This document shows positions 1 through 50,320 of a DNA stretch of 64,000 nt, piece by piece. The number at the start of each line of letters is the position of its first letter. The first letter of the stretch is position 1. This stretch comes from Ostrea edulis (lineage: Eukaryota), in assembly GCF_947568905.1 (NCBI RefSeq), contig NC_079166.1, positions 31,000,001 to 31,064,000 on the forward strand, written 5' to 3'. Both the position numbers and the translations under genes were made by a program. Below the pieces are notes generated by a model. It was not told the DNA's origin. It did no database searches and was given only the letters and a program-made list of their open reading frames with translations.

Positions 1-935
1 GAGATATTAACACCATGTGTAGGTAATAATGGAATATTGTTACATAAATATGGGAAGTTGATGATGTAGAAGCTGAAATCATCCCGTTTGTCATAAAGTT
101 GAGTTGTTAGTTTGCCATTCATATCTATTTTCAATAAAATATCTAAGTGTGAAGCAGAAGTAGACGGCTCTTCGGTGTCTTTTATTTCTAGTTCACAAGG
201 ATATATCGAATTGACATATGAATGAACGTTATTATTGTTAATAGACAAAACGTCGTCGATATATCTAAATGTCGAATTGAAGGCCACAACAAGATATTGT
301 TTCTTCTCACGTAGAAGTTTTTCAATAAATTCTGCTTCATATGAATATAAAAACAGGTCAGCAAACAAAGGAGCACAATTCATGCCAACTGGAAGACATA
401 ATCACCAAAAACCTTGAAGATATTGTCTATGAGGAACTCTAGCAACTTTCAACTTCAGAGTACTTCTGCATGGAATCAGAGTGGTGTTTAACAAATTAAT
501 TTTTTGGATGACTAATGTCTAGATATGAATATTTCCGTTTTCCATTTTTGTTGAAGAAGCAACTGTCTATGGTGTCAAAAAGTCTAGTCTTTAATTTATC
601 GTGAGGAATGGTCGTGTAAAGTGTTGAAAAGTCATACGTTTTGATGTTATTGATTTGATAAAAGTTTTGCGATTTCAAGTCTTCTAAAAGTTTTTTAAAG
701 AATTTTTCAGAATCCACATTTGCTTTACACCACTTCTGGTATATGCAGTCCCACGGTTGGTTTGACGTTTCTCCTTGACAGCTGTTAATATTTTTGTGAG
801 GAGCAAAGATAGGGGATATAGCGAACTTTGATTATGATATCTTTTTTGCATCATGAATTTGAGAAGTTGTCATCGCGTAAACTTGTCAAAGACTTGAAGT
901 GTAAGTTTGTCGTTAACGTCTTTGTTCAGTAAAAC
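1..935 (-). mobile_element. Degraded Penelope-like retroelement RT fragment (Naiad/Chlamys-like)
   Basis: Minus-strand frames give FSTLYTTIPHDKLK and a frameshifted MNCAP..ADLFLYSYEAEF..FRYIDD region, which are PLE-type RT motifs. Confidence 0.85.
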
Positions 936-1512
936 ATCTAAATATAAAACCGATGTGAAAAAATCGTGAGGTCTTTTTTTTATCACGGGTTCACTGGGAT
1001 GAAAGGTGAAGGTAACGAACATTTATCCATGCTCTGATTTCAGAATTTTTTCAGCCTTTGTTCATTCATTATATCATGTTCACTCTAAATACTACGCTTT
1101 ACTGGCGGTGGGTTCCAATCAATTCACCAACTGAAGGTGAAATAACACAACAGAGTTGATACATTCGAGAAAGACATTTGCGGTTTTCATCGAATGTTCC
1201 GGTTTTGTACTCATAAAATAATATTTGCCTAAGTGACATTCCATTCTTTTTCAAGCACTTCCTGTCGTATTGAAGTACATTACATGTTTTATTTTAAATT
1301 GCATTGAATAGACGATCTCAATTGTGCCAATCCAATTTTCGAAGCTTTCCAGTCATAATGAAGTAGGTTTTCATATGATTTGTTCTACACTCAAATGTAA
1401 TTAAGGATTGAATGAAAAAGGGATAGAAAAAATCGTTCAAACAAAATAATTCGTCTAGTTGTTTCTGGATTTATACATTACTTTTGTTAAAAGTTAGTTT
1501 TAGGTCAGGTAT

Positions 1513-3099
1513 ATGGAGGCTGTTATAGAGAGCTTTATCACGCTGTGTAGAATTTTAGCCCTCCCGATTTTTCCAAAGGTTCGGCAATCAGGCTTCAACA
1601 ACAGTGCACACAGAGTAACCTTCTTGTTGTTTATGCACGTGTTATCCGGAATATTCGTTATCATCGGAATATACGCAGCAGGCCAAGCCACATCAGACGA
1701 GGCTAACATTAAGGGTTGGGTAGTAGTGATGGTCTTTGTAACAACTGGACTGATTTCGCTGGTCATTCTCCTCATCGCAGGGTGCACAAATAGACTAACT
1801 ACGCATGCGAGACGCAAAACCAAAATGTCCGATCCATCCTTGAAACTCCGAATAGGATTTCTGTGGGTGTTTGGATTAGCTGTAATGGCACATCTGTCCT
1901 TAAACTTCGCAACTTATATCGACTGCGTCCAATCTTATTCCTCCTTAAAGAGCGTCCATGTGACATTTTCGATGATGAGTAATACAATTTTATCACTCTT
2001 TCTCATAATTCAAATAGCCTTTATTTCGTATTATCAAAATGCATCCTTCACAAGGAGTCATGTGGTAAATTTTGCGAGTATTTTCATTCTAGCGGCGAAT
2101 TTTATCATCTGGTATAACGGTGCGTTGAGTAGTATCTATGTATTTGGACTGGTCGGAAACAATACAGTCCCACGTTATAGCAACGAGTCCTATTGCTTTA
2201 GAACATCTAAAATACAACACAACCTGACTAGAAAGATAACGCCATATTTAATTCCGTTTAGAATGGAGTTCTGTATTCTAGCATCCAGCTTTATCATAAC
2301 ATTCTGGAGGTGGCCGATGGACTATGTACGCGACGAAGGGAGTAGCACTGATTATCGTGTGTTCCGCCGAGACGAAGAGGGTAACACTGATTATCAAGTG
2401 CTTCACGGGGATGCTGAGGATGGCAATATGCCTTCTTCTGAGAAAAGAAATCACATACACGGACCCCATATTTTTGCAATAGTGTGTGGCATTGTCCTAA
2501 ACATGCCGACTTTTTTCTCAAAGCTTTTGCTATCGTTTGTCCCTGACGAGAAAAATCGTTTTGTTGTTTACATTGGCGAGTCTTTGAGTGCGGTTTGCAG
2601 CATCGCCATCGTTTACATATGCAGTTATCGTTTGAACAAGAATTTCAGCAACTCTTGGAGACACAGCAGACTAACGACCAATGAGTACATTCTAATTCTG
2701 ACGTCCTCTGGAATGGTGTCCTATTTTGTGATTGGTGTACTGACCGCTTTTTCATACCCCAAAAGGATGAAATTGTATGTCGGTTGCCGTTTCCTTGGTT
2801 TACTTGAAATATTTCTACAAACGTACTTCTTAATCAAAGTCAGAAGATACCACCTCAACGACAATCACTGTATTATCATTTCCTCGTGTGGAATTATTCT
2901 CATGTTAACCAATCTTATCTATTGGCTCCTACATTCTTACAGCCAGAATGCGTTTGTGGAAAGTCTGGAAATATTCTTCGTTGGACGCGAGAAATGGCTT
3001 TACATGGAAAGCATACTAGTTCCCTTACTGACATTTTACAGGTTTTTCTCCGGCATGAGTGCTTATTCCTTATATTACAAGTTTAAACCCGATCATTAA
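1513..3099 (+). CDS. OTOP: Otopetrin-like proton channel, type A copy 1 (528 aa, single coding exon)
   Basis: About 12 hydrophobic segments in two halves. OTOP-like motifs: LRIG..FGL, LIIQI, ANFIIW, PYLIPFRMEFCIL, EIFLQTYF, TNLIYW, PLLTFYRF. The ORF is uninterrupted. Confidence 0.9.
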   Translation: MEAVIESFITLCRILALPIFPKVRQSGFNNSAHRVTFLLFMHVLSGIFVIIGIYAAGQATSDEANIKGWVVVMVFVTTGLISLVILLIAGCTNRLTTHARRKTKMSDPSLKLRIGFLWVFGLAVMAHLSLNFATYIDCVQSYSSLKSVHVTFSMMSNTILSLFLIIQIAFISYYQNASFTRSHVVNFASIFILAANFIIWYNGALSSIYVFGLVGNNTVPRYSNESYCFRTSKIQHNLTRKITPYLIPFRMEFCILASSFIITFWRWPMDYVRDEGSSTDYRVFRRDEEGNTDYQVLHGDAEDGNMPSSEKRNHIHGPHIFAIVCGIVLNMPTFFSKLLLSFVPDEKNRFVVYIGESLSAVCSIAIVYICSYRLNKNFSNSWRHSRLTTNEYILILTSSGMVSYFVIGVLTAFSYPKRMKLYVGCRFLGLLEIFLQTYFLIKVRRYHLNDNHCIIISSCGIILMLTNLIYWLLHSYSQNAFVESLEIFFVGREKWLYMESILVPLLTFYRFFSGMSAYSLYYKFKPDH

Positions 3100-3186
3100 A
3101 TCGCATTGAAGCAGGATTTCTCGACCTCAATACACACCTGATATGAACTGTACTGTCCTACTACAGATAGGAGAACCAAAACATTG

Positions 3187-3295
3187 GACTCGTCACGTGA
3201 CCATTCAATGGACTTCACGTGTCTGACAATTCAACGGACCTCACGTGTCTGACCATTCAACGTACGTCACGTGTTTGACAATTCAATGGACGTTT
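3187..3295 (+). repeat. ~26-bp tandem repeat (about 4 units), each with CACGTG
   Basis: Units such as ccattcaatggacttcacgtgtctga start ~90 bp after the A1 stop. Confidence 0.85.
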
Positions 3296-3472
3296 CCATG
3301 CCTGTTCAGTAATACCTGAGAAATTTGTTTTTGAATTCACATCATTATTTTGTACTGTTTGGATATAGATGAACTCTTCACGGGTGAAGTTGATTGCATT
3401 TTGTGTACATAGAAAGTTTGTATAGCGTTTATATTATTGTATTCACAAATGTATATCCACGACTTTGTGATA

Positions 3473-3690
3473 CTGTGGAATCATTAGAATTCGTGGTGGC
3501 TCAATTTTCATGGAATTCGTGGGTACCCCTCACCCACGAATTTACATCCTCAACGAATAAAGAATCATAATTACATTCCAGAGTTATCTTTCTTACAAAT
3601 ATATAAATCCACGAAATGACATCCCCACGAACCCGTAAAAATTCAGCAATCCACGAAAATTGGCCCCCACGAATTTAAATGATTGTACAG
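3473..3690. mobile_element. Tc1/mariner-type MITE, TA TSD
   Basis: TA|ctgtggaatcatt...aatgattgtacag|TA imperfect TIRs. Paralogous copy at 19284-19501. Confidence 0.8.
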
Positions 3691-3752
3691 TACTCTGTGT
3701 GTTTATCTTTGTAATAACATACATTGAATATGAAAAGATGGTCTGCCATATC

Positions 3753-3760
<8 letters not shown>

Positions 3761-3815
<55 letters not shown>
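3761..3815 (+). repeat. (GA)n microsatellite
   Basis: Pure GA run; paralogous run at ~19638-19688. Confidence 0.98.
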
Positions 3816-10029: not shown

Positions 10030-10822
10030 AGAAAAAGTTAACATAACTACCAGTGATCAATCTCATAAATCCTATAAAGAATACAAAATTAAGGTTATGG
10101 TAAACACGGACCCCTGTACACTTCAGAGGTGGAATCAGGAGCTTAGGAGGAGTAAACACCCCTTGTTGATAAGTCACACACGCCGTGAGACTTCTATCTT
10201 GATGAAGTAAACGGAGTAATCCGTAAGTACAATCAGTATGAACAGAACAGCCTAACACGTCAGAAAGACAGCATTCGACCTAACGACAGGATGTTTTTTG
10301 CGAATTATATCATTAGATCAACTTAATGACAAACGGGATGACTTCAGCATTCTATAGCAATATTCTATTATCACCTGCATATGGTGTTTATATCCCTCAA
10401 ATGATTCATTACGCAAGAGTTTGTTCTGCGTATGATCAGTTTTTAAATCGACGTAGGCTACTGACAATCAAGTTGATGGTGCAGGGTTTCATCAGTCTCG
10501 TTTAAAGTCAGCATTTCGCAAATTCTATAGTCGTTTTAACAATCTAGTTTGCTAATACAACCTATCAAATGCTGTCTGGCGTGTTTCATAACGATTGTTA
10601 GGCCGTTATTGGCACACTAATTTTGAATACGGATAACTACGTTTACCTGATCGAAATATAGAGCACACGGCATATGTGACCGGTCGACAGGGGATGCTTA
10701 CTCCTCCTAGGCAACTGATCCCACCTCTGGTATATCTAGGGGTCCGTGTTTGCCCAACTCTCTATTTTATATTGCTTATAGGAGTGAGGAAATTGGTTAC
10801 TGTTCGTTATCTTCACCTTTCA
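10030..10822. mobile_element. Two Penelope-like 3' fragments in opposite orientation (minus ~10030-10305, plus ~10320-10822)
   Basis: Both match the family 3' region; the plus copy ends cttcacctttcat. Confidence 0.8.
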
Positions 10823-10959
10823 TTATTATAACGAATATAGAATTGGCGAAATGTTGACTTTAAACGAGATTGTTTAAGCACCTGTAGAATCAACTAAATT
10901 GTCTTATTTGAAAATTTATCATATGCAGAACATGTCTCTAAACACCACGTGCAAGTGAT

Positions 10960-11230
10960 GATGCAATATTCCTACATAAATATGGACAACTGGTGTGGAG
11001 AAGTCATCCCGTTTGTCATAAAGTAAAATTTTAGTTTGACGCTACAATTTAAATTCAATGAAATATCAAAACAGCCAAATACGAAGTAGATATGAAAGCG
11101 TCTGTGGTGTTTTTTTATTTTAAGGTCACTGGGATATATCGAATGAAAATGAATATTGTTCATAGATATAACATTGTCGATATACCCATGCATTTAGATA
11201 TCGAGTTGAAGCCACAACCAAAGATGTTTT
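10960..11230 (-). mobile_element. Old Penelope-like RT fragment
   Basis: GYIDNVISMNNIHFHSIYPSDLKIK is a degraded YIDD region. Paralog at ~24130-24400. Confidence 0.7.
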
Positions 11231-11412
11231 CGTGTAGAAGCATTCGTGCCCATGGGTAGAATTCCATCAAGTACATTCTTATCCCACAATACATGTATTC
11301 CTATTGATAATGGCTGTGTTAATCTTAAGCTTTCCTCTCTATATGTCTATTTCTCTTTTGGTTTGCTCTCTATTCAGTTGAATTCATCATTAATTGTAAC
11401 ACGAGTGCAACA

Positions 11413-11518
11413 ATTCTAAGGATGAGTTAGAGATAATTTTAATTCTAAGGATGAGTTAGAGAGAACATTGATTTTGAGGATGAGTTATAGATAATTTTAA
11501 TTCTAAAGATGAGTTAGA
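11413..11518 (+). repeat. ~29-bp tandem repeat (about 4 units)
   Basis: aattctaaggatgagttagagataatttt repeated; only one unit occurs at the paralogous site ~24570. Confidence 0.85.
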
Positions 11519-11744
11519 AGGTTGGGGCTATATATAAAATAATTATAAATAAGATCATTATAACGACCATAGAATTTCCGAAATGCTGTCTTCACAGAAA
11601 CTGATGAAACCCCTGATTACAAAACAGAAAAGATTGTGAAAACACCCATTCCTCGCCCATTTACAATCGAATTGCTGCAACACGGCAAATAGAATTTCAG
11701 AGAGCTATTTGATGTCTGCAATGAAAGTTCCTCCTTGAAAATTG

Positions 11745-11950
11745 TTCCTGGAAGTAAGAGAAATTCCTCCATTTTTAAGCACTTCCTGCTGTTAAATATC
11801 ATTCAATACAACCTAAATCTCATGATTAAACGCCCTTCCGTTTTTGAAGCACTTCCTCTTATATTAATGTATGCAGCATATCCAATATACTACCCTGATT
11901 AGGAATTTAATGAAGAGGTAAACGACCAAGCACTAACGAAATACTTCCTC
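11745..11950. promoter_or_regulatory. Cluster of ETS-core motifs (GGAAGT/ACTTCC) upstream of type B genes
   Basis: ttcctggaagt 11745, aagcacttcctg 11777, aagcacttcctc 11847 and atacttcctc 11941, all retained upstream of B2. This is a motif match only. Confidence 0.35.
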
Positions 11951-12013
11951 TAGAGGTCATTGGAATCGCTCATTACGTTTCTTACAAATCAATTCTGATA
12001 TCTGGAGGTTGTT

Positions 12014-13553
12014 ATGGAGAGTTGTAAGACACTGTGTAGAATTTTAGCCCTCCCGATCATTCCAAATGTTCCGCAATCAGGCCTCAACAATAGTGGAGAG
12101 AAAATTTCATTCTTATTCTTTTTACACGTAATGTTTGGGCTATTTGTCATCAACAGGGTATTTGCAGCCGAACAAGCAACATCAGAAGAATCCAACATAA
12201 AGAATTGGGTGGTAGTGATGGTCTTTGTAACAATTGGACTGATTTCGCTGGTTATTCTCCACATCGCAGGTTGCAGAAATGCGCTGCATATAAACAGTAT
12301 ACCAGAAACCAAAATATCTGATCCATCCTTGAAGCTTCGAATAGAATTTGTGGGTGTTTGGATTAGTGGTGATGGTACATGTGTCCTTGAACTTTGCAAC
12401 TTATATTGACTGCATCCAATCTTATTCCTTAAGAGGTGTCCATGTGACATTTTTGTTGACGAGTAACATAATCTTATTACTCTTCCTTATCAATCAAATT
12501 ACCTTTGTTTCGTATTTCCGACATACATCTTTCACAAGAGATTATACTGTCAACTTTGCCAGTATGTTCGTTCTAGTGACCAACTTTGTCATTTGGTATA
12601 GTGTAGTGGTTAGTAAAAGCTCATCAGTTGGAATGATGAAGAACGATGCGGAATCAAACCAAAGCAATGAGACCTATTGCTTTCTAACATCTAAGATACA
12701 GCAGAAATTATCTTGAAATATGACGCCATATTTATTTCCATCTAGAATGGAGTTCTGTATTCTAGCATCCAGCTTTATCATAACATTGTGGAGGTGGCCG
12801 GTGGAATATGTACGGAATGAAGGGAGTAACACAGACTATCAAGTGCTTCACGAAAATATTGATGATCGTAATATGCCTTCCCCTGAGAAAAGAAATCACA
12901 TAAACGGACCTCATATATTTGCAACAGTATGTGGGATTGTCATTAATATGCCAACTTTTTTCTCAGAGATATTGCTAGTATTTGTCTCTGACTGGAACCA
13001 TGAAGCCCTCCTTCTTACTCTTTACACCGGCAAGTCTTTGACTCCGGTTTGCAGCATCGCCATCATTTACATATGCAGTTACCGTTTGAACAAGAATTTC
13101 AGTAACTCTTGGAGACACAGCAAACTAACGACCAATGAGTACATTCTAATGCTGACGTTCTCTGGAATGGTGGCCTATTTTGTGGTTGGTGTTCTGACCG
13201 CTTTTTCATACCCCAAAAGGATGAAGGTGTATGTCTCTTTCCATTTTCTTGGTTTACTAGAAATATTTCTACAGACGTACTTCTTCATCAGAATTAGGCG
13301 GTACGATCTCAATGGCAACCAATCCATTCTCATTTCCTCATGTGGAATTATTCTCATGTTAACCAACCTGATTTACTGGCTCCTAAATTCTTCCAAGCCG
13401 AATGCTTTTGCGGAAAGTCGAGACATATTCCTTGTAGGACGCGAGAAACGGTTCTACATAGAAAACATACTAGTTCCTTTACTGACATTTTACAGGTTTT
13501 TCTCGGCCATGAGTGCTTATTCCTTATATTGTAAGTTTAAACCAAATCGTTAA
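12014..13553 (+). pseudogene. OTOP: Otopetrin-like type B copy 1, pseudogene
   Basis: Colinear with B2 but has a 2-bp deletion at 12349/12350 (gaattt-gtgg vs ggatttctgtgg) and TGA at 12714-12716 (TTA in B2). It also has W>R in the conserved EKW motif. Confidence 0.88.
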
Positions 13554-14449
13554 AACATAGTGAACCAGTGCGTTTCTTAAACCTTTCCACGTTAAGATTC
13601 AACTTTATATAAATTGTGTTGTCCTATATGGGCTTATGAACGAAACGCTATATGTGCCTTATTTTACGTGAGTACTGTTATCGCGCAATGACTTGGGGAA
13701 TTTTATTTCGCCTGTGGTGCTCCTTGCTAAATCACGTGATAACTAACCCCTCGCATATATCTAGAACGCTACGGTATCTTCAGGTAGATGTGCAAACGTG
13801 TAGAGCTCATAGGACATAGTGGGAAATTCAGTACACGTCAGAGGATTGTTTTGGAAAATAAGGGGAAAACTAATTAAGTAGATCACGAACTTTCTACCCC
13901 AGTCCCGCCTTCAGCATCAAAACTATCAAAATAATAATTCAATCCGCTTGAAGAGAAGCCACCCAATCCAAAGTTGAAAAGAAAATTAAAACTTAATTAC
14001 GTTAGTTATTAATGACAATTCAATTTCATTTGTCTTTTGTATGAATTCAATAAATATCCATATTAAACAGTTATCCATTAGTACGATAAGATAAATTTAT
14101 TCCAATTTTGGACCCAGAGGGCAAAACAGCAAGACAGCTTATAAAGAAGGAAATTTCAAAAAAGAAAGTTTACAACATTAACTACAGGTTACATGGACTG
14201 CAAACTACATGTGGATGTAGCATGTTGGGGCAACGAGTACATACATATACGTAACAATCAGTAATGAGTGTTAACATACGACCTTCTGCATTGGATCACT
14301 ATATATTTTTTCAATTGTTTTTCCTCTCACAAATACGAATTATTTACATGAATGCATCAAAACTTTTTTTATTCATAAACAAACTGTGTCATAAAAAGAG
14401 CTTTTTATACTTAATCCATATATGTGTTCACGATCTTCGTTTTCTTTCA

Positions 14450-15379: not shown

Positions 15380-16745
15380 AAGGTGAAGATAACGAACAGT
15401 AATCAATCTCATAATTCCTATAAGCAATACCGAAAAAATAGTTGGGCAAACACGGACCCCTGGACACACCAGAGGTGGGATCAGGTGCCTAGGAAGAGTA
15501 AGCATCCCTTGTTGACCGGTCACACCCACCGTGAGCCCTATATCCTGATCAGGTAAACGGAATTATCCGCAGTTAAAATCAGTGTGCCACGAACGGCTTA
15601 GCAATCGGTATGAAAAACGTCAGACAGCATTTCACCCAATGATAGGTTGTACTGACGAACTAGATTGTTATAACGACCATACAATTTGCGAAATGCTGAC
15701 TTCAATCGAGACTGTTGAAACCCCTGTACCATCAACTTCTTTGTCAGTAGCTTGTCTCGATTTAAAAACTGACCATACGCAGAACAAGCTCTTCCGTATC
15801 GAATCAGTTGAGATATATAAACACCATGTGTAGGTGATAATGGAATATTGCTACATAAATATGGGAAGTTGATGATGTAGAAGCTGAAATCATCCCGTTA
15901 GTCATAAAGCTGAGTTGTTAGTTTGACATTAATATCTATTTTCAATAAAATATTTAACTGTGAAGCAGAAGTGGACGACCCTGCGGTGTCTTTTATTTCT
16001 AGTTCACAAGGATATATTGAATCCACATATGAATGAACGTTATTGTTGTAAATAGATAAAACGCTGTCGATATATCTAAATGTCGAATTGAAGGCCACAA
16101 CAAGAGATTGTTTCTTCTCACGTAGAAGGTTTTCAATAAATTCTGCTTCATATGAATATAAAAACAGGTCAGCAAACAAAGGAGCACAATTCATGCCAAC
16201 TGGAAGACATAATCACCAAAGACCTTGAAGATATTGTCAAAGAGGAACTCTAGCAACTTTCAACTTCAGAGTACTTGTGCATGGAATCAGAGTGGTGTTT
16301 AACAAATTAATTTTTCGATGACTGGTGTCTAGATATGAATATTTCCGTTTTCCATTTTTGTTGAAGAAGCAACTGTCTATGGTGTCAAAAAGTCTAGTCT
16401 TTAATTTATCGTGAGGAATGGTCGTGTAAAGTGTTGAAAAGTCATACGTTTTGATGTTGTTGATTTGATCCAAAAAAAATTGCAATTTCAATTCTTCTAA
16501 AAGGTTTTTAAAGAATTTTTCAGAATCCACATTTGATTTACACCACTTCTGGCATATACAGTCGCACAGTTGGTTTGACGTTTCTCCTTGACAGCTGTTA
16601 ATATTTTTGTGAGGAGCAAAGATAGGGGATATAGCGAACTTTGATCATGATATTTTTTTTGCATCATGAATTTGAGAAGTTTTCATCGCGTAAACTTGTC
16701 AAAGACTTGAAGTGTAATTTTGTCGTTAACGTCTTTGTTCAGTAA
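15380..16745 (-). mobile_element. Penelope-like element (RT through 3' end), degraded
   Basis: Contains FSTLYTTIPH, MNCAPLFADLFLYSYEAEF, FRYIDSVLS, the thumb region and the family 3' UTR ending at ~15380. Confidence 0.9.
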
Positions 16746-17319
16746 AACATCTAAATATAAAACCGATGTGAAAAAATCGTGAGGTCTTTTATCACGGGTT
16801 CACTGGGATGAAAGGTGAAGGTAAGGAACATTTATCCATTCTCTAATTTCACAATTTTTCAGCCGTTGTTCATTAATTATATCATGTTCACTCTAAATAC
16901 TACGCTTTAAGGACAGTGGGTTCCAATCAATTCACCAACTGAAGGTGAAATAACACAACAGAGTTGATACATTCGAGAAAGACATTTGTGGTCTTCATCG
17001 AATGTTCCGGTTTTGTACTCATAAAATAATATTTGCCTAAGTGACATTCCATTCTTTTTCAAGCACTTCCTGTCGTATTGAAGTACATTACATGTTTTTT
17101 TTTAAATTGCATTGAATAGACGATCTCAATTGTGCCAATCAAATTTTCGAAGCTTTCCAGTCACAATGAAGTAGGTTTTCATATGATTTGTTCTACACTC
17201 AAATGTAATTAAGGATTGAATGAAAAAGGAATAGAAAAATCGTTCAAACAAAATAATTCTTCTAGTTGTTGCTGGATTTATACATTACTTTTGTTAAAAG
17301 TTAGTTTTAGGTCAGATAT

Positions 17320-18906
17320 ATGGAGGCTGTTATAGAGAGCTTTATCACGCTGTGTAGAATTTTAGCCCTCCCGATCTTTCCAAAGGTTCGGCAATCAGGC
17401 TTCAACAACAGTGCACACAGAGTAACCTTCTTGTTGTTTATGCACGTGTTATCCGGAATATTCGTTATCATCGGAATATGCGCAGCAGGCCAAGCCTCAT
17501 CATATGAGTCCAACATTAAGGGTTGGATGGTAGTGATGGTCTTTGTAACAATTGGACTGATTTCGCTGGTCATTCTCATCATCGCAGGGTGCACATATAG
17601 GCTAATTACACATGCGAGACGCAAAACCAAAATGTCCGATCCATCCTTGAAACTCCGAATAGGATTTCTGTGGGTGTTTGGATTAGCTGTAATGGCACAT
17701 GTATCCTTAAACTTCGCAACTTATATTGACTGCGTCCAATCTTATTCCTCCTTAAAGGGCGTCCATGTGACATTTTCGATGATGAGTAATACAATCTTAT
17801 CACTCTTTCTCATAATTCAAATAGGCTTTATTTCGTATTATCAACATGCATCCTTCACAAGGAGTCATGTGGTAAATTTTGCGAGTATTTTCATTCTAGC
17901 GGCGAATTTTATCATCTGGTATAACAGTGCGTTGAGTAATATCTATGTATTTGGAATGGTCGGGAACAATACAGTCCCACGGTATAGCAACGAGTCCTAT
18001 TGCTTTAGAACATCTAAAATACAACACAACCTGACTAGAAAGATAACGCCATATTTATTTCCGTTTAGAATGGAGTTCTGTATTCTAGCATCCAGCTTTA
18101 TCATAACATTCTGGAGGTGGCCGATGGACTATGCACGCGACGAAGGGAGTAGCACTGATTATCGTGTGCTCCGCCGAGACGAAGGGGGTAACACTGATTA
18201 TCAAGTGCTTCACGGGGATGCTGAGGATGGCAATATGCCTTCTTTTGAGAAAAGAAATCACATACACGGACCCCATATTTTTGCAATAGTGTGTGGCATT
18301 GTCCTAAACATGCCGACTTTTTTCTCAAAGCTTTTGCTATCGTTTGTCCCTGACGAGAAAAATCGTTTTGTTGTTTACATTGGCGAGTCTTTGAGTGCGG
18401 TTTGCAGCATCGCCATCGTTTACATATGCAGTTATTCCTTGAACAAGAATTTCAGCAACTCTTGGAGACACAGCAGACTAACGACCAATGAGTACATTCT
18501 AATTCTGACGTCCTCTGGAATGGTGTCCTATTTTGTGATTGGTGTACTGACCGCTTTTTCATACCCAAAAAGGATGAAGATGTATGCCTGTTGCCGTTTC
18601 CTTGGTTTACTAGAAATATTTCTACAAACGTACTTCTTAATCAAAGTCAGAAGATACCACCTCAACGACAATCACTGTATTCTCATTTCCTCGTGTGGAA
18701 TTATTCTCATGTTAACCAATCTTATTTACTGGCTCCTAAATTCTTACAGCCAGAATGTTTTTGTGGAAAGCCTGGAAATGATCTTCATTGGACGCGAGAA
18801 ATGGCTTTACATAGAAAGCATACTAGTTCCCTTACTGACATTTTACAGGTTTTTCTCCGGCATGAGTGCTTATTCCTTATATTACAAGTTTAAACCCGAT
18901 CGTTAA
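17320..18906 (+). CDS. OTOP: Otopetrin-like proton channel, type A copy 2 (528 aa)
   Basis: Intact ORF with about 33 aa differences from A1 (hand count) and the same OTOP-like motifs. Confidence 0.9.
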   Translation: MEAVIESFITLCRILALPIFPKVRQSGFNNSAHRVTFLLFMHVLSGIFVIIGICAAGQASSYESNIKGWMVVMVFVTIGLISLVILIIAGCTYRLITHARRKTKMSDPSLKLRIGFLWVFGLAVMAHVSLNFATYIDCVQSYSSLKGVHVTFSMMSNTILSLFLIIQIGFISYYQHASFTRSHVVNFASIFILAANFIIWYNSALSNIYVFGMVGNNTVPRYSNESYCFRTSKIQHNLTRKITPYLFPFRMEFCILASSFIITFWRWPMDYARDEGSSTDYRVLRRDEGGNTDYQVLHGDAEDGNMPSFEKRNHIHGPHIFAIVCGIVLNMPTFFSKLLLSFVPDEKNRFVVYIGESLSAVCSIAIVYICSYSLNKNFSNSWRHSRLTTNEYILILTSSGMVSYFVIGVLTAFSYPKRMKMYACCRFLGLLEIFLQTYFLIKVRRYHLNDNHCILISSCGIILMLTNLIYWLLNSYSQNVFVESLEMIFIGREKWLYIESILVPLLTFYRFFSGMSAYSLYYKFKPDR

Positions 18907-18974
18907 ATCGCATTGAAGCAGGATTTCTCGACCTCAATACACACCTGATATGAACTGTACTGTCCTACTACAGA

Positions 18975-19105
18975 TAGGAGAACCAAAACATTGGACTCGT
19001 CACGTGTCTGAAAATTAAACGGTCGTCGAGTGTTTGACCATTCAACGGACGTCACGTTTCTGACAATTCATTGGAACTTACGTGTTTGACAATTCAATGG
19101 ACGTT
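18975..19105 (+). repeat. Degenerate paralog of the 26-bp repeat downstream of A2
   Basis: Same periodicity; only the first CACGTG is intact. Confidence 0.8.
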
Positions 19106-19283
19106 TTCATGCCTGTTCAGTAATACCTGAGAAATTTGTTTTTGAATTCACATCATTATTTTGTGCTGTTTGGATATAGATGAACTCTTCGCGGGTGAAG
19201 TTGATTGCATTTTGTGTACATAGAAAGTTTGTATAGCGTTTATATTATTGTATTCACAAATGTATATCCACGACTTTGTGATA

Positions 19284-19501
19284 CTGTGGAATCATTAGAA
19301 TTCGTGGTGGCTCAATTTTCGTGGAATTCGTGGGTACTCCTCACCCACGAATTTACATCCTCAACGAATAAAGAATCATAATTACATTCCAGAGTTATCT
19401 TTCTTAAAAATATATAAATCCACGAAATGACGTCCCCACGAACCCGTAAAAATTCAGGAATTTACGAAAATTGGCCCCCACGAATTTAAATGATTCTACA
19501 A
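19284..19501. mobile_element. Tc1/mariner-type MITE (paralog of 3473-3690)
   Basis: Same TIRs and same position relative to the A gene. Confidence 0.8.
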
Positions 19502-19636
19502 TACTCTGTGTGTTTATTTGTGTAATGACATAAATTGAATATGAAAAGATGGTCTGCCATATCATCAAACTTGTATATGTGAAAATTAGTCAAATTTAGT
19601 ACATGAAGCAATAAGGAAGAATGTTGGGAACAACGT

Positions 19637-22571: not shown

Positions 22572-23641
22572 GTATCTATATAAACTAACTGCTAAAACAA
22601 ACTACAATAGCCGTGTTTCGACCGGTAGGAAATGTTGTGGCATATCGATGGATGGTTTTGAACACCTGCAATAAATTTTGACAGACAATTACCCCTCTTT
22701 GGTAAACATATCAATAAAGATGTGTTCAAATCATACAATATGGCAATACTTGATATAAAACATTTCGTTTTGTCGAGTAAATATGAAATTATGCATAATT
22801 GTATCAGAATTAAGCAAATGTTTCGTAGACATAAAATCATAGAAGGGTTTTAGTTGAGAAATGTGTTACTAAAGAATTACAGATAAAAGAGGGTTTAAGC
22901 TTATAAAACTGTGTGTAATACCCTCACTGTGTTGTACCACAGTCTTTATGTAGAGTAATCTTTCTTTCTATCTCACTCATTCACGAATGTTTTTTCACAA
23001 TAGGGGTATGCCATTGTACATGCATATCAAAATTAAGTAGTAATTATAATTTCAACAATGTTAGATAAAAACAATGACAAGTCACGGTAGCCAAGTGATT
23101 AAAGCACTGATTTTGCAACCGGGGGGGGGGAGTAACGGTTCGATTCAAACTTCGTCAAACTTAAGGCATTTAACATACATGTAGGTAGTGATTGCTCCAT
23201 TACCGAACTTTTAACATTTAAAATCAAAACAGGACAAACATGTTCTCACCACTTGCATGCAAAATGTCTTAACATAACAGAGATATACGTCATCGTTCTT
23301 TCGTTTAAACCTATTTATTTATACTAGGACATTTACCGGGTGGTTTCTTGCCTATGGCAGCAGCGAAATTCAAACAAGTGTGGATGATTTCAGACCTTTC
23401 AATTAAAATATCATATCAAATATACGCTACTTACTTCCTCATACTTTAATAAAGTTCTCTATGTTCGCCGTATCTGGGTGGCTTATTTTATAAAACATCA
23501 AATCCTGCCTCTAACTGCTATTTTGATAAACGCACTAAAGACCCGAAATACCTAAAACTTTAAGGAAAGCAAAATGGGTAAGAACAATCAAAATCAAATA
23601 AAATAAATAACAAAAAATTAAGAAAGCTAAAATATAATAAT

Positions 23642-23994
23642 AAGTTGATGGTGTAAGGTTTCAACAGTTTCGTTAAAAGTCAGCATTTCGCAAATTTTAT
23701 GGTCGTTATAACAATCTAGTTTGCCAATATAACCTATCAAATGCTGTCTGACGTGTTTCATAACGATTGTTAGGCCGTTATTGGCACACTAATTTTGAAT
23801 ACGGATAACTCTGTTTACCTGATCGAAATATCGGGCACACGGCATGTGTGACCGGTCGACTTGGGATGCTTACTCCTTCTAGACACTTGATCCTACCTCT
23901 GGTATATCCAGGGGTCCGTGTTTGCCCAACTCTCTATTTTATATTGCTTATAGGAGTGAGGAAATTGGTTACTGTTCGTTATCTTCACCTTTCA
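23642..23994 (+). mobile_element. Penelope-like 3' fragment (paralog of ~10470-10822)
   Basis: Family 3' UTR ending cttcacctttcat. Confidence 0.8.
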
Positions 23995-24989
23995 TTATTA
24001 TAAGAAATATAGAATTGGCGAAATGTTGATTTTAAACGAGATCGTTGAAGCACCTGTAGCATCAACTAAATTGTCTTATTTGAAAATTTATCATATGCAG
24101 AACATGTCTCTAAACACCACGTGCAAGTGATGATGGAATATTCCTACATAAATATGGAAAATTGATGTGGAGAAGTCATCCCGTTTGTCATAAAGTAAAA
24201 TTCTAGTTTGATGCTACAATTCAAATTCAATGAAATATCAAAACAGCCAAATACGAAGTAGATATGAAAGCCTCTGTCTTGGTTGTTTTTTTTTTCGAGG
24301 TCACTGTGATATATCGAATGAAAATGAATATTGTTTATATATATAACATCGTCGATATACCCATGCATTTAAATATCAAGTTGAAGCCACAACCAAATAT
24401 GTTTTCGTGTAGAAGCATTCGTGCCCATGGGTAGAATTCCATCAGGTACATCCTTATCCCACAGTACATGTATTCCTATTGATAATAGCTGTGTTAATCT
24501 TACGCTTTCCTCTCTATATGTCTATTTCTCTTTCCAGTTGAATTCATCATTAATTGTAACACGAGTGTAACAATTCTAAGGATGAGCTAGAGAGAATTTT
24601 AACCCTTGATTACAAAAAATAAAAGATTGTGAAAACACCCATTAATCACCCATTTACAATCGAATTGCAACAACACGGCAAATAGAATTTCAGAGAGCTA
24701 TTTAATATCTGCAAGGAAAGTTCCTCCTTGAAAATTGTTCCTGGAAGTAAGAGAACTTTCTCCATTTTTAAGCACTTCCTGTTGTTAAATATCATTCATG
24801 ATTAAACGCCCTTTCGTTTTTGGAGCACTTCCTCTTATATTAATGTTTGCAGCATATCCAATATACTACCCTGATTAGGAATTTAATGAAGAGGTAAACG
24901 ATCAAGCACTAACGAAATACTTCCTCTAGAGGTCACTGGAATCGCTCATTACGTTTCTTACAAATCAATTCTGATATCTGGAGGTTGTT

Positions 24990-26537
24990 ATGGAGAGTTG
25001 TAAGACACTGTGTAGAATTTTAGCCCTCCCGATCTTTCCAAATGTTCCGCAATCAGGCTTCAACAATAGTGGAGAGAGAATTTCATTCTTATTCTTTTTA
25101 CACGTAATATCCGGGCTATTTGTCATCAACGGGGTATTTGCAGCCGAACAAGCAACATCAGAAGAATCCAACATTAAGAATTGGGTGGTAGTGACGGTCT
25201 TTGTAACAATTGGACTGATTTCGCTGGTTATTCTTCTCATTGCAGGTTGCAGAAATACGCTGCATACAAATAGAATACCAGAAACCAAAATGTCCGATCC
25301 ATCCTTGAATCTTCGAATAGGATTTCTGTGGGTGTTTGGATTAGTGGTGATGATACATGTGTCCTTGAACTTTGCAACTTATATTGACTGCATCCAATCT
25401 TATTCCTTAAGAGGTGTCCATGTGACATTTTTGTTGACGAGTAACATAATCTTATTACTCTTCCTCATCATTCAAATTACCTTTGTTTCGTATTTCCAAC
25501 ATACATGTACTTCTTTCACAAGAGGTTATATTATCAACTTTGCCAGTATGTTCGTTCTAGTGGCCAACTTTGTCATTTGGTATAGTGTAGTGGTTAGTAA
25601 AAGCACATCATTAGGAATGATGAAGAACGATGCGGAATCAAACCAAAGCAATGAGACCTATTGCTTTCTAACATCTAAGATACAGCAGAAACTATCTTTA
25701 AATATGACGCCGTATTTATTTCCATCTAGAATGGAGTTCTGTATTCTAGCATCCAGCTTTATCATAACATTGAGGAGGTGGCCGATGGACTATGTACGAA
25801 ATGAAGGGAGTTACACTGACTATCAAGTGCTTCACGAAAATATTGATGATCGTAATGTTCCTTCCCCTGAGAAAAGAAATCACATAAACGGACCTCATAT
25901 ATTTGCAACAGTGTGTGGGTTTGTCATTAATATGCCAACTTTTTTCTCAGCGATATTGCTAGTATTTGTCTCTGACTGGAACCAAGAAGCCCTTCTTCTT
26001 ACTATTTACACCGGTGAGTCTTTGAGTGCGGTTTGCAGCATCGCCATCGTTTACATATGCAGTTATTGTTTGAACAAGAATTTCAGTAACTCTTGGAGAC
26101 ACAGCAAACTAACGACCAATGAGTACATTCTAATTCTGACATCCTCTGGAATGGTGACCTATTTTACTATTGGTATACTGACCAATTTTTCATACCCCCA
26201 AAACATGAAGATGTACGCTTGTTGTCGTTTCCTTGGTTTACTAGAAATATTTCTACAGACGTACTTCTTCATCAGAATTAGGCGGTACAATCTCAATGGC
26301 AACCACTCCATTCTCATTTCCTCGTGTGGAATTATTCTCATGTTAACCAATCTGATTTACTGGCTCCTAAATTCTTACAAGCAGAATGCTTTTGCGGAAA
26401 GTAGAGAAATATTCCTTGTTGAACGCGAGAAATGGCTCTACATAGAAAACATACTAGTTCCTTTACTGACATTTTACAGGTTTTTCTCGGCCATGAGTGC
26501 TTATTCCTTATATTGTAAGTTTAAACCGAATCGTTAA
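24990..26537 (+). CDS. OTOP: Otopetrin-like proton channel, type B copy 2 (515 aa)
   Basis: Intact single-exon ORF with motifs PYLFPSRMEFCIL, EIFLQTYF, TNLIYW and PLLTFYRF. Confidence 0.9.
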   Translation: MESCKTLCRILALPIFPNVPQSGFNNSGERISFLFFLHVISGLFVINGVFAAEQATSEESNIKNWVVVTVFVTIGLISLVILLIAGCRNTLHTNRIPETKMSDPSLNLRIGFLWVFGLVVMIHVSLNFATYIDCIQSYSLRGVHVTFLLTSNIILLLFLIIQITFVSYFQHTCTSFTRGYIINFASMFVLVANFVIWYSVVVSKSTSLGMMKNDAESNQSNETYCFLTSKIQQKLSLNMTPYLFPSRMEFCILASSFIITLRRWPMDYVRNEGSYTDYQVLHENIDDRNVPSPEKRNHINGPHIFATVCGFVINMPTFFSAILLVFVSDWNQEALLLTIYTGESLSAVCSIAIVYICSYCLNKNFSNSWRHSKLTTNEYILILTSSGMVTYFTIGILTNFSYPQNMKMYACCRFLGLLEIFLQTYFFIRIRRYNLNGNHSILISSCGIILMLTNLIYWLLNSYKQNAFAESREIFLVEREKWLYIENILVPLLTFYRFFSAMSAYSLYCKFKPNR

Positions 26538-26577
26538 AACATAGTGAACCAGTGCGTTTCTAAAACCTTTACGTTAC

Positions 26578-32277: not shown

Positions 32278-33169
32278 CCAACTACCCTTTCAAAAGATGA
32301 AATTAATTAAAATCATTCTTCCGTTGTAGATACATTTCATATCCCAGTCAATGGGTCGGATAAATATGAGTTACCGTACCTATACTGGATCCCTTAACTT
32401 AAGAAAAATCCTTACAAAGATACATTACTGGATCCAGTTCGTGCTCTACCAAGCCCATATCTTTGCTCCTCACGAAAGTATTAACAGCTGTGAAGGAGAA
32501 ACTTCAAATGTACTGTGCAACTACATGTGCCAGAAGTGGTATAAATCAAATGTAGATTCTAAAAAATTCTTTAAAAAACTTTTAGTAAACTTGAAATCGC
32601 AAAACTTTTCTAAAGTCAACAACATCAAAACATATGACTTTTCAACACTTTACACAACCATTCCTCACGACAAATTAAAGACTATACTTTTTGACATCAT
32701 AGACAGTTCTTAGACAAAAATAGAAAACGGAAATATTCATATATAATGATAAGTCATAAAAAAAACCTTCTTAAACACCACTTGGATTCCACGCACAAGT
32801 ACTCTGAAGTTAAAATTAAAAATATATCGGTCCCTCAATGACAATATTTTCGCAGTCTTTGGTGATCAAGTCTTCCAACAGTCTGTTGGAATACCAATGG
32901 GCACGAATTGTGATCCTTTGTTAGCTGACCTGTTTTTATTATCTTGTGAAGCAGAATTTATTCAAAAACTTCTACACGAGAAGGAAAGATCTCTTGCTGT
33001 GGCCTTCAAATCGACATTTAGATATATCGACGACGTTCTATCTGTTAACAATATAATCATTTTCATTCACATGTCGATTCGATATATCTCTAAGAACTCG
33101 AAATAAAAGATAACACATAGTCGTCCACTTCTTTTTCATACTTAGATATTTTATTTAAAATAGATATTA

Positions 33170-47986: not shown

Positions 47987-48514
47987 GTGGGTGACATTTC
48001 GGTGTATCGTTCCGACATGTGTCGTTGCGATATCTGTCGTTACGATATATGTCATTACGATACATTCTAGTTTATTCATGGACACAATGATGTAACCATA
48101 CATAAAAGAAGCATGTTGGGTTTGCTGTTGCCCCCACCCACCCCCACCCCCCCCCCCCCCAAAAAAAATCAAGAGGTTGATGTTGCAGCTTATAAGCAAA
48201 AGTGCTTCATTGGAAATAGCTGTATGGACACCTGGTGAAGATTACTGTGGGGCACCTGTTTAACATAGCTGCAGATACTTGTGGAGCACCTGGTTGAGAT
48301 AACCGGGACACAGAATTAAAAGCTTTGGGTCACCTGATGAAAGAGCTATGGAGTACCTAAGTAAAAACTGCTGTATGGAGGAATAGGATAACCTGGGGTA
48401 TTTAATTAAGATTAAGGGCACCTAAAATAGCTGTAGTTTGCAATGGAAAAGATGTGGGGCACTTGATTAAAACATTGAAATAGGTATAGGGCACCTGGTT
48501 CACGTAGCTCTGGG

Positions 48515-49938
48515 ATCCCTGATTAATATAGTGGTAAGATTCCTGATTAATATAGTGGTGAGAACCCTGATTAATATAGTGGTGATATCCCTGATTAATA
48601 TAGTGATGAGAACCCTGATTAATATAGTGGTGAGATCCCTGATTAATATAGTGGTGAGATCCCTGATTAATATAGTGATGAGAACCCTGATTAATATAGT
48701 GTTGAGATCCCTTATTAATATAGTGGTAAGATTCCTGATTAATATAGTGCTGAGATCCCTGACTAATATAGTGGTAAGATCCCTGATTAATATAGTGTTG
48801 AGATACCTGATTGATATAGTGATGAGAACCCTGATTAATATAGTGGTGAGATCCCTGATTAATATAGTGGTGAGATCCCTGATTAATATAGTGATGAGAT
48901 CCCTGATTAATAGTGATGAGATCCCTGAGTAATATAGTGATGAGATCCCTGATTAATATAGTGATGAGAACCCTGATTAATATAGTGATGAGAACCCTGA
49001 TTAATATAGTGGTGAGAACCCTGATTAATATAGTGATGAGAACCCTGGTTAATATAGTGGAGAGATCCCTGATTAATATAGTGATGAGAACCCTGATTAA
49101 TATAGTGATGAGAACCCTGATTAATATAGTGATGAGATCCCTGATTAATATAGTGATGAGATCCCTGATTAATAGTGATGGGATCCCTGATTAATATAGT
49201 GATGAGATCCCTGATTAATATAGTGATGAGAACCCTGATTAATAATGTGATGAGATCCCTGATTAATATAGTGATGAGATCCCTGATTAATATAGTGTGA
49301 GAACCCTGATTAATATAGTGATGAGATCCCTGATTAATATAGTGATGAGAACCCTGATTAATATAGTGATGAGATCCCTGATTAATATAGTGATGAGATC
49401 CCTGATTGATATAGTGATGAGAACCCTGATTAATATAGTGATGAGAACCCTTATTAATATAGTAGTGAGATCCCTTATTGATAATGTGTTGAGATCCCTG
49501 ATTAATATAGTGATGAGATCCCTGATTGATATAGTGATGAGATCCCTGATTGATATAGTGATGAGAACCCTGATTAATATAGTGATGAGAACCCTGATTA
49601 ATATAGTGTGAGAACCCTGATTAATAATGTGATGAGATCCCTGATTAATAGTGATGAGATCCCTGATTAATATAGTGATGAAATCCCTGATTAATATAGT
49701 GGTGAGAACCCTGATTATTATAGTGATGAGAACCCTGATTAATATAGTGATGAGAACCCTGATTAATATAGTGATGAGATCCCTGATTATTATAGTGATG
49801 AGAACCCTGATTAATATAGTGATGAGAACCCTGATTAATATAGTGATGAGAACTCTGATTAATATAGTGATGAGATCCCTGATTAAGATAGTGGTGAGAA
49901 CCCTAATTGATATAGTGATGAAATCCCTGATTAATATA
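48515..49938 (+). repeat. 24-bp minisatellite (~59 units)
   Basis: Unit ccctgattaatatagtgatgaga(t/a). Confidence 0.97.
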
Positions 49939-49939
49939 T

Positions 49940-50320
49940 TGTACCCCTCCACTATATCATGTACCCCTCTACTACAGATATATGTACCCCTCTACTATAT
50001 CATGTACTCCAGTGTAAGGGGTACATGGTATAGTGAAAGGGTATATGATATATTGTAGGGGTATACATAATATATTGTAGGGGTACATGATATAATGTAG
50101 GGATATACATGATATATTGTAGGGGTACATGATATATTGTAAGAATATACATGATATATTGTAGGGGTATACATGATGTATTAGAGGGGTATACATGATA
50201 TATTGTAGGGGTACATGATATAATGTAGGGATATACATGATATATTGTAGGGGTACATGATATATTGTAGGGATATACATGATATATTGTAGGGGTTTAC
50301 ATGATATATTGGAGGGGTAT
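49940..50320. repeat. 20-22-bp minisatellite with an orientation switch at ~50010
   Basis: Unit atacatgatatattgtagggg; the first ~3 units are inverted. Confidence 0.9.

What the first reader, a model, noticed from the sequence alone, without database searches (positions are those of the whole stretch)
2254..3048. Conserved OTOP pore/interface motif residues are replaced in all four copies
Seen: the TM6 motif reads P(F/S)RMEFC (A1 2254-2274) and the last-TM motif reads FYRFFS (A1 3034-3048) in A1, A2, B1 and B2. Gln and Asn at the expected triad positions are retained (LIIQI, ANFIIW, FLQTY, TNLIYW). Established (recalled, verify by alignment): characterised OTOPs have PFxIEY and FYRxH. The Tyr belongs to a Gln-Asn-Tyr constriction triad, and the Glu and His sit at the N/C-domain interface and matter for current. 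Inference: Tyr>Phe plus His>Phe, fixed across subtypes, may mean altered selectivity or gating, or a non-proton-channel function.
Basis: partly seen in the sequence, partly recalled or inferred. Interest (0 to 1): 0.75.

Follow-up and report, generated by a model that had tools for sequence, protein, structure and literature searches.

The report
Oyster otopetrin-like genes lacking relay histidine
Four tandem oyster genes (one broken) encode otopetrin-fold membrane proteins that keep the buried glutamate but lack the histidine that published structures name as the proton acceptor, which makes them natural test cases for how this channel family conducts protons.

Summary
All four single-exon otopetrin-like copies read P(F/S)RMEFC in TM6 and FYRFFS in TM12. 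One phmmer, one HMM-profile and one profile-profile alignment place these on the PFxIEY and FYRxH motifs of solved or canonical OTOPs. So the TM6 Glu, both Gln/Asn pairs and the FYR Tyr/Arg are kept. The N-barrel triad Tyr is Phe, and the TM12 His is Phe.

Corrections and additions:
- Copy B2 is a pseudogene, with a 2-bp frameshift and a premature stop.
- The Tyr>Phe change is ordinary. It occurs in 26 of 61 relatives outside the clade, including 12 of 31 that keep His.
- The His loss defines a well-supported clade known only from oysters (Crassostrea, Magallana, Saccostrea and this genome). That position is F, Y, L or T in all 18 rows.
- His has been lost at least 8 to 11 times among 79 relatives (named ones mostly bivalve), while the Glu is mostly kept.
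- The vertebrate Asp partner of His is Asn here, with an invariant acidic neighbour.
- dN/dS of 0.35-0.40 and intact ORFs argue for function.
- The AlphaFold model matches only OTOP structures.

Most likely the Glu-to-His proton relay cannot run as published. Whether these proteins conduct protons by another route or serve another role is untested. No RNA evidence was found. An earlier scan note (s1-301762) flagged the same array on this window.

The parts
1513..3099 (+). A1: intact single-exon otopetrin-like gene, 528 aa
   Evidence: ORF. Pfam PF03189 Otopetrin at 56.2 bits against a cutoff of 27.8. The AlphaFold2 model has 12 long helices, and its 12 best Foldseek matches are all OTOP structures.
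2254..2274 (+). A1 TM6 motif PFRMEFC. E252 is the interface Glu (zebrafish OTOP1 E267). F253 replaces the N-barrel triad Tyr (Y268).
   Evidence: Alignments; coordinates.
3034..3051 (+). A1 TM12 FYR box FYRFFS. Y509 and R510 are kept. F512 replaces the proton-acceptor His (zebrafish OTOP1 H574, CeOTOP8 H567).
   Evidence: Alignments. DNA-run contigs covering 3007-3199 agree with the window.
2674..2688 (+). A1 start of TM9, TTNEY. N390 aligns with the vertebrate Asp that pairs with the His (XtOTOP3 D509). E391 is a clade-invariant acidic neighbour.
   Evidence: HMMER, MAFFT and hhalign all give N390/E391 = D451/D452 of Hydra OtopLc. Hydra D451 aligns with XtOTOP3 D509 and the zebrafish Asp.
2002..2112 (+). 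A1 N-barrel triad Gln (Q167 in LIIQI) and Asn (N196 in ANFIIW), both retained
2803..2925 (+). A1 C-barrel residues, all retained: E432 (position of zebrafish OTOP1 E429), Q436 in FLQTY, N467 in TNLIYW
17320..18906 (+). A2: intact gene, 528 aa, 94% identical to A1 in protein. Motifs at 18061-18081 and 18841-18858.
   Evidence: Pfam Otopetrin at 50.4 bits.
24990..26537 (+). B1: intact gene, 515 aa, 73% identical to A1. Motifs PSRMEFC at 25722-25742 and FYRFFS at 26472-26489.
   Evidence: No Pfam hit at E<=0.01 on its own. It groups with A1/A2 at SH-aLRT 100.
12014..13553 (+). B2: broken copy, 94% identical to B1 in DNA. It has a 2-bp deletion near 12349, a 6-bp in-frame deletion near 12528, and a stop at 12717-12719. 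The motifs are still readable at 12738-12758 and 13488-13505.
   Evidence: The lesions were not checked against independent reads.
1..3754 (.). First copy of a segmental duplication. It matches 15810-19565 at 95.5% identity, and 10466-13594 matches 23639-26576 at 92-93%. An A-B gene pair was therefore duplicated in tandem.
   Evidence: Self-blastn. dS is 0.056 for A1/A2 and 0.089 for B1/B2, against about 0.39-0.47 between A and B types.

Best explanation
Shown:
- These are true members of the otopetrin-domain family with a 12-helix double-barrel fold.
- They belong to a clade of intronless, tandemly duplicating paralogues known so far only from oysters.
- The clade keeps the buried TM6 glutamate, both Gln/Asn pairs, the C-barrel Tyr-Arg of the FYR box and the TM10 Glu.
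- It has a hydrophobic or hydroxyl residue (Phe in these genes) where canonical OTOPs have the TM12 histidine, and Asn where vertebrate OTOPs have the His-pairing TM9 Asp.

Inferred:
- The published Glu-to-His proton hand-off, and the His/Asp-dependent desensitisation, cannot operate as described.
- The proteins are therefore not canonical OTOP proton channels. Either they carry little or no proton current, or they conduct with different kinetics through another acceptor. Candidates are the invariant TM9 Glu391 in the same intracellular cavity, or water.
- The invariant buried Glu, and dN/dS well below 1, suggest that protonation of that Glu still matters. Conduction or pH sensing therefore seems more likely than an inert remnant.
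- The Tyr>Phe change in TM6 is a common family polymorphism and probably has little consequence.
For: - Family and fold: Pfam hits. Foldseek gives probability 1.00 to all 12 OTOP chains, TM-score by target 0.62-0.81, and nothing else below E=0.03.
- Residue homology.
- Clade: 18 rows at SH-aLRT 100. All have E-F in TM6. The His position holds F (15), Y, L or T. Members are named from Crassostrea virginica, Magallana gigas and Saccostrea cucullata. A Saccostrea member is also single-exon.
- Constraint: E252, Y509, R510, Q436 and N467 are invariant in the clade. dN/dS between A and B types is 0.35-0.40.
- Role of His: His669Ala/Gln abolish XtOTOP3 current and Glu321Gln does too (PMC6483595). CeOTOP8 His567 accepts the proton from Glu325 and pairs with Asp439 (PMC11343839). 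E267 and H574 are described as necessary and highly conserved (PMC12549899).
Against: - No functional or expression data exist here. No RNA run was listed.
- The His position is non-His in 30 of 61 relatives outside the clade, and was lost at least 8-11 times. This could mean His is dispensable in this branch of the family.
- The proton path in OTOPs is still debated. Three candidate routes are discussed, and the C-barrel features are intact here.
- dN/dS is 0.51 for A1/A2, and one copy is dead, so constraint is only moderate.
- The model has mean pLDDT 67. I had no coordinates, so the geometry around F512, E252 and E391 was not measured.
Confidence: 0.6

Rival explanations
1. They are ordinary proton channels. 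In this branch of the family the TM12 His is dispensable, because protons leave the TM6 Glu through water or through the TM9 Glu. The substitution would then be nearly neutral.
For: - His was lost repeatedly (at least 8-11 changes) while Glu is kept in 51 of 61 relatives outside the clade.
- The position varies within the clade (F, Y, L, T), as expected for a site with no special role.
- The C-barrel triad, Arg510 and E432 are intact.
- E391 is invariantly acidic.
Against: - His-to-Ala or Gln abolishes current in XtOTOP3, and loss of function is also reported for zebrafish OTOP1.
- Authors of structural work call the His absolutely or highly conserved.
- It is invariant in 24 cnidarian OtopLc sequences.
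Confidence: 0.28
2. The array is decaying. The substitutions reflect relaxed selection on redundant, unexpressed duplicates heading for pseudogenisation.
For: - B2 is already broken.
- dN/dS is 0.51 for A1/A2 and 0.62 for B1/B2.
- No RNA run was listed.
- A1 and A2 were not retrieved as predicted proteins from the public protein collection, whereas B1 was.
Against: - Three full-length ORFs of 515-528 aa survive at A/B dS of about 0.4.
- The same motif state is shared by 18 cluster representatives spanning several oyster genera, with 39 invariant columns.
- dN/dS between subtypes is 0.35-0.40, well below 1.
Confidence: 0.1
3. The apparent replacements are alignment artefacts, and the true Tyr and His lie elsewhere.
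For: Identity to solved OTOPs is only 12-16%. The TM9 register can also be read by eye with E391 opposite the vertebrate Asp.
Against: - Three independent alignment methods agree at TM6 and TM12, which are anchored by the P-x-x-x-E and FYR motifs.
- No His occurs in TM12 of A1.
Confidence: 0.02

Closest known systems
Vertebrate OTOP1/2/3 proton channels (zebrafish OTOP1 6nf4, mouse OTOP2 8ug6, Xenopus and chicken OTOP3)
   Same: - The 12-TM double-barrel fold (Foldseek).
- The TM6 P-x-x-x-E motif with the buried Glu.
- The FYR box Tyr and Arg.
- Gln and Asn of both triads.
- A Glu at the position of zebrafish OTOP1 E429.
   Different: - TM12 His is Phe, the TM9 Asp is Asn, and the N-barrel triad Tyr is Phe.
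- Sequence identity is only 12-16%.
- The genes have no introns and sit in a young tandem array.
C. elegans OTOP8 (8ug4/8ug5), the basis of the Glu325-to-His567 relay model
   Same: The fold (TM-score by target 0.62-0.67). The F-Y-R-x-(His) spacing in TM12, including the Phe that moves to let the His flip (F508 here).
   Different: The acceptor His is absent, so states 4-6 of the published conduction cycle (PMC11343839) have no counterpart.
Cnidarian, hemichordate, nemertean and brachiopod OtopLc-like proteins (e.g. Hydra vulgaris XP_002168414)
   Same: Homologous over 487 columns (hhalign probability 99.65%). E391 matches their invariant second Asp of the TM9 DD pair.
   Different: In the 24 cnidarian OtopLc sequences aligned, His and Tyr are invariant (PFTMEY, FFRFHS). 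On the tree, the 15-row canonical group that holds these phyla is separated from the 64-row branch by SH-aLRT 100.
Other His-less otopetrin-like paralogues of bivalves and a nemertean (Crassostrea virginica XP_022312590, Pinctada imbricata KAK3096702, Mytilus XP_076073400, Tubulanus XP_074642646)
   Same: A non-His residue at the same TM12 position, usually with the TM6 Glu kept.
   Different: They carry different replacement residues (Q, K, S, T, L, I) and arose as separate losses on the tree. Some have also lost the FYR Arg or the Glu. None is in the FYRFF clade.

Membership tests
Otopetrin domain protein family (Pfam PF03189) | Significant match to the Otopetrin profile | tested here: met
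   A1 scores 56.2 bits, A2 50.4 bits and the B2 C-terminal piece 41.1 bits, against a cutoff of 27.8. B1 has no hit at E<=0.01 on its own but is 73% identical to A1.
Otopetrin domain protein family (Pfam PF03189) | Twelve transmembrane helices in two homologous six-helix barrels | tested here: met
   The AlphaFold2 model has 12 long helices (pLDDT 67, pTM 0.67). Its top 12 Foldseek matches are all OTOP1/2/3/CeOTOP8, and the next match is at E=0.03.
Otopetrin domain protein family (Pfam PF03189) | FYR box at the C-terminal helix (Hughes 2008, PMC2268672) | tested here: met
   F508-Y509-R510 are present in all four copies. Y509 and R510 are invariant in the 18-row clade.
OTOP proton channels (functional class, Glu/His relay) | Buried TM6 glutamate (zebrafish OTOP1 E267) | tested here: met
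   E252 is invariant in the clade.
OTOP proton channels (functional class, Glu/His relay) | TM12 histidine proton acceptor (zebrafish OTOP1 H574, CeOTOP8 H567) | tested here: not met
   F512 occupies this position in A1, A2, B1 and B2. Across the clade it is F, Y, L or T.
OTOP proton channels (functional class, Glu/His relay) | TM9 aspartate that pairs with the His (XtOTOP3 D509) | tested here: inconclusive
   The aligned column is N390, and the next residue, E391, is invariantly acidic. All three alignment programs give D = N390, but a register reading with E391 opposite the Asp also fits the downstream residues by eye.
OTOP proton channels (functional class, Glu/His relay) | N-barrel Gln-Asn-Tyr triad | tested here: not met
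   Q167 and N196 are present, but the Tyr is F253. This feature is weakly defining: 26 of 61 relatives outside the clade have Phe.
OTOP proton channels (functional class, Glu/His relay) | C-barrel Gln-Asn-Tyr triad plus the FYR Arg | tested here: met
   Q436, N467, Y509 and R510 are all present.
OTOP proton channels (functional class, Glu/His relay) | Proton-selective, Zn-sensitive current on heterologous expression | not testable with these tools
   This needs electrophysiology.
OTOP proton channels (functional class, Glu/His relay) | Homodimer assembly | not tested
   Only a monomer model was made.

The most novel reading that the evidence does not exclude
The histidine described as absolutely conserved and essential for OTOP conduction has been discarded at least eight separate times among 79 otopetrin-like relatives (named ones mostly bivalves), while the buried glutamate is kept. 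The FYRFF subfamily, known only from oysters, is one such case. If these proteins are functional, then either OTOPs have a His-independent proton route, which would limit the generality of the Glu/His relay model, or the OTOP fold has a second, non-conducting role such as Glu-based pH sensing.
Probability: 0.3. Interest if true: 0.75.

Novelty: new variant of a known kind. Interest (0 to 1): 0.5.

Why it matters
OTOPs are one of only two known families of eukaryotic proton-selective channels, and their conduction path is still argued over. The leading structural model makes the TM12 histidine the obligatory proton acceptor.

A selectively maintained natural subfamily that keeps the Glu, the FYR Tyr/Arg and the C-barrel triad but lacks that His gives a ready-made test. 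If it conducts, the model needs another route. If it does not, the OTOP fold has non-channel uses.

In oysters, proton handling is tied to calcification and to life in variable pH. Which of the many OTOP paralogues actually move protons therefore also matters for physiology. I found no paper on bivalve otopetrins in the library searched.

Tried and rejected
- A profile search of the word-indexed protein collection with a 60-sequence alignment returned only the same 13 oyster proteins. A search with Hydra OtopLc returned only cnidarian orthologues. I therefore could not tabulate the His column across arthropod, nematode and vertebrate OTOPs, and I rely on the solved structures and on authors' statements.
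- Expression: neither run search listed an RNA holder. The runs laid behave as genomic DNA, with equal depth in gene and flanks, so they confirm sequence only. The 2.3-2.8 kb Logan contigs of homologues are not evidence of transcripts; the one I examined ends in a (CT)n microsatellite.
- A test for coupling between His loss and Tyr loss found none (sign test, median p 0.375).
- A screen for clade-specific conserved polar residues that might replace the His found Y135, Y368, S398, E432, S457, Y476 and Y497, but no obvious titratable substitute. E432 is simply the counterpart of zebrafish OTOP1 E429.
- I first labelled E391 as the Asp equivalent (labels). HMMER and hhalign, together with the Hydra-to-PDB alignments, make N390 the better equivalent.

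Full report
**What is in the window**

The + strand carries four otopetrin-like coding regions without introns:
- A1 at 1513-3099 (528 aa).
- B2 at 12014-13553.
- A2 at 17320-18906 (528 aa).
- B1 at 24990-26537 (515 aa).

tblastn with A1 finds no further copy in the 64 kb. Self-comparison shows that 1-3754 matches 15810-19565 at 95.5%, and 10466-13594 matches 23639-26576 at 92-93%. An A-B pair was therefore duplicated in tandem. This fits dS of 0.056 (A1/A2) and 0.089 (B1/B2), against 0.39-0.47 between the A and B types.

B2 is not intact. Relative to B1 it has a 2-bp deletion near 12349, an in-frame 6-bp deletion near 12528, and a stop codon at 12717-12719. The closest named relatives are from Saccostrea cucullata, Crassostrea virginica and Magallana gigas, so the window comes from an oyster.

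**Check of the observation**

- PFRMEFC at 2254-2274.
- FYRFF at 3034-3048, with the Ser at 3049-3051.

The same motifs occur in A2, B1 (PSRMEFC) and B2. Contigs from three independent DNA runs cover 2274-2607 with 0-3 differences and 3007-3199 with 0-1. The second stretch holds the TM12 motif. No listed contig piece covers the TM6 motif at 2254-2274.

**Are these the homologous positions?**

Yes, by three methods.
- phmmer of A1 against PDB sequences aligns mouse OTOP2 'YLYPFNIEYSLFAS' with 'YLIPFRMEFCILAS', and 'FYRMH' with 'FYRFF'.
- A profile of the 18 closest relatives aligns zebrafish OTOP1 (6nf4) 'PFNIEY' with 'pprlEF' and 'LFYRMHS' with 'tfYRffS'. It also pairs the Gln and Asn of both barrels. 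PDB chain numbering is the paper's numbering plus one.
- hhalign of that profile against 24 cnidarian OtopLc-like proteins gives probability 99.65% over 487 columns. It pairs E252 with Glu, F253 with Tyr, F512 with an invariant His, and Q167/N196/Q436/N467 with Gln/Asn/Gln/Asn.

All solved OTOPs shown in the alignments read PFN(I/T)EY and FYRMH(S/A), and Hydra OtopLc reads PFTMEY and FFRFHS.

In zebrafish OTOP1 numbering, the residues in the oyster proteins are:

| zebrafish OTOP1 residue | Oyster residue (A1) | State |
|---|---|---|
| E267 | E252 | kept |
| Y268 | F253 | Tyr to Phe |
| Y571, R572 | Y509, R510 | kept |
| H574 | F512 | His to Phe |
| Q174, N204, Q433, N528 | Q167, N196, Q436, N467 | kept |

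**Fold and family**

Pfam Otopetrin is hit above threshold by A1, A2 and the C-terminal piece of B2. An AlphaFold2 model of A1 built on the 18-sequence alignment has mean pLDDT 67 and pTM 0.67, with twelve long helices. Foldseek against the PDB returns twelve OTOP1, OTOP2, OTOP3 and CeOTOP8 chains at probability 1.00, with TM-score by target of 0.62-0.81. Nothing else scores below E=0.03. Membership of the otopetrin-domain family is secure.

**What the literature says about the residues**

- The Gln-Asn-Tyr triads sit at the constriction of each barrel. E267 and H574 line the intrasubunit interface and are called highly conserved (bioRxiv 10.1101/542308).
- In XtOTOP3, the N-barrel triad tolerates mutation. 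The C-barrel triad does not. Glu321Gln abolishes current, as do His669Ala and His669Gln. Asp509 on TM9 hydrogen-bonds the His and controls desensitisation (PMC6483595).
- Structures of CeOTOP8 and mouse OTOP2 led to a model in which the TM6 Glu takes a proton from outside and hands it to the TM12 His. The His then flips and releases the proton to the cytosol. The authors call these two residues 'absolutely conserved' (PMC11343839).
- A 2025 inhibitor study again describes E267 and H574 as necessary and conserved across all otopetrins (PMC12549899).

The His>Phe change therefore removes the residue that the current model makes indispensable.

**How widespread is each change?**

An exhaustive phmmer search of 1.84 billion representative proteins found only 127 relatives at E<=0.001. 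This shows how far these proteins lie from mainstream OTOPs. I aligned the 79 relatives of 400 aa or more with the window proteins and built a tree with the two trait columns removed.

The window genes fall in an 18-row clade (SH-aLRT 100). Every member has E-F in TM6. The His position holds F in 15 rows, and Y, L or T once each. Named members are all oysters, and one Saccostrea member is also a single exon. The nearest relative outside the clade is only about 27-29% identical to A1.

In the 61 rows outside the clade:
- The His column holds H in 31 rows, Q in 11, K in 4, I and S in 3 each, L and T in 2 each, and five other residues once each.
- The TM6 Tyr column holds Y in 31 rows and F in 26.
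- The Glu column holds E in 51 rows.

On the tree, the His/non-His state changes at least 11 times, 8 of them forced by well-supported branches. The TM6 state changes at least 19 times. Twelve of the 31 His-bearing rows have Phe in TM6, and the two changes are not coupled.

Named His-less proteins outside the clade come from Crassostrea virginica, Pinctada, Mytilus and a nemertean. A separate 15-row group, with Hydra OtopLc, Saccoglossus, Lineus and Lingula among its named members, mostly keeps both His and Tyr.

Two conclusions follow:
- Tyr>Phe is an ordinary polymorphism of this family.
- His loss is real and fixed throughout a clade known only from oysters. It is also a recurrent event in the 64-row branch of the family that holds that clade, whose named members are bivalves.

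**The His partner**

Three alignments place N390 of A1 opposite the first Asp of the invertebrate 'DD' pair. Through Hydra, that first Asp is the counterpart of XtOTOP3 D509 and of the zebrafish Asp. The neighbouring E391 is acidic in all 18 clade members and matches the invariant second Asp of the cnidarian proteins.

So both residues of the vertebrate His-Asp pair are neutral here, but an acidic side chain remains one position along the helix. A register reading with E391 opposite the vertebrate Asp also fits the downstream residues by eye, so I treat this point as inconclusive. His-bearing oyster paralogues also lack an acid in the first column, so the Asn is not specific to the clade.

**Selection and expression**

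dN/dS is 0.35-0.40 between the A and B types, 0.51 for A1/A2 and 0.62 for B1/B2, where B2 is the pseudogene. The clade alignment has 39 invariant columns. These include E252, F253, Q436, N467, Y509 and R510. This indicates moderate purifying selection with gene birth and death, not simple decay.

I found no expression evidence. No RNA run was listed for A1 or B1, and the runs I laid behave as genomic DNA.

**Mechanism**

Shown:
- The proteins have the OTOP fold.
- The Glu is kept.
- The His is replaced by Phe.
- The C-barrel residues are kept.

Inferred:
- The Glu-to-His hand-off cannot occur, and neither can desensitisation that depends on the His and Asp.
- I put about 0.6 on the proteins differing functionally from canonical OTOPs. 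Within that, absence of proton current and conduction through another acceptor seem about equally likely. The candidate acceptors are E391 and water in the intracellular cavity.
- I put about 0.28 on ordinary channel behaviour with a dispensable His.
- I put about 0.1 on non-functional decay.

An invariant buried Glu in a hydrophobic interface is costly to keep, which argues that its protonation is still used.

**Novelty**

I found no paper on bivalve otopetrins in the library searched. Public records name these proteins only as 'uncharacterized' or 'Otopetrin-2'. This is a new variant of a known family, not a new kind of system.

Its value is as a natural test of the relay model.

Noticed in passing
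window 12014-13553: B2 is a pseudogene. Relative to B1 it has a 2-bp deletion near 12349, a 6-bp in-frame deletion near 12528 and a stop at 12717-12719. The lesions were not verified with independent reads.
   Followed up: partly
window 1-3754 vs 15810-19565; 10466-13594 vs 23639-26576: A young segmental duplication of an A-B gene pair, at 95.5% and 92-93% identity, including about 1.5 kb upstream of the A genes.
   Followed up: partly
window 48510-50320: A long tandem array with a period of about 24 bp, seen as self-matches at offsets that are multiples of 24 with about 90% identity. It is overlapped by a 221-aa ORF on the minus strand (49287-49952).
   Followed up: no
window 3190-3290: Three to four tandem copies of a unit of about 32 bp, each containing CACGTG (E-box-like), about 90 bp downstream of the A1 stop codon. 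A (GA)n microsatellite follows at about 3767-3815.
   Followed up: no
window 121-815, 15898-16628, 32454-33169: Repeated fragments with reverse-transcriptase-like ORFs on the minus strand, about 81% identical to one another. They are likely retroelement remnants flanking the genes.
   Followed up: no
window 2251: All three DNA runs laid show A>T at this position, which would change Ile247 to Phe in A1. Phe is the residue found in A2 and B1. This could be an allele or cross-assembly with A2.
   Followed up: no
window 1513-3099 and 17320-18906: The exact B1 protein is present in the public protein collection, but A1 and A2 were not returned as predicted proteins. They may be unannotated or modelled differently in the source annotation.
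   Followed up: no
   Followed up: no
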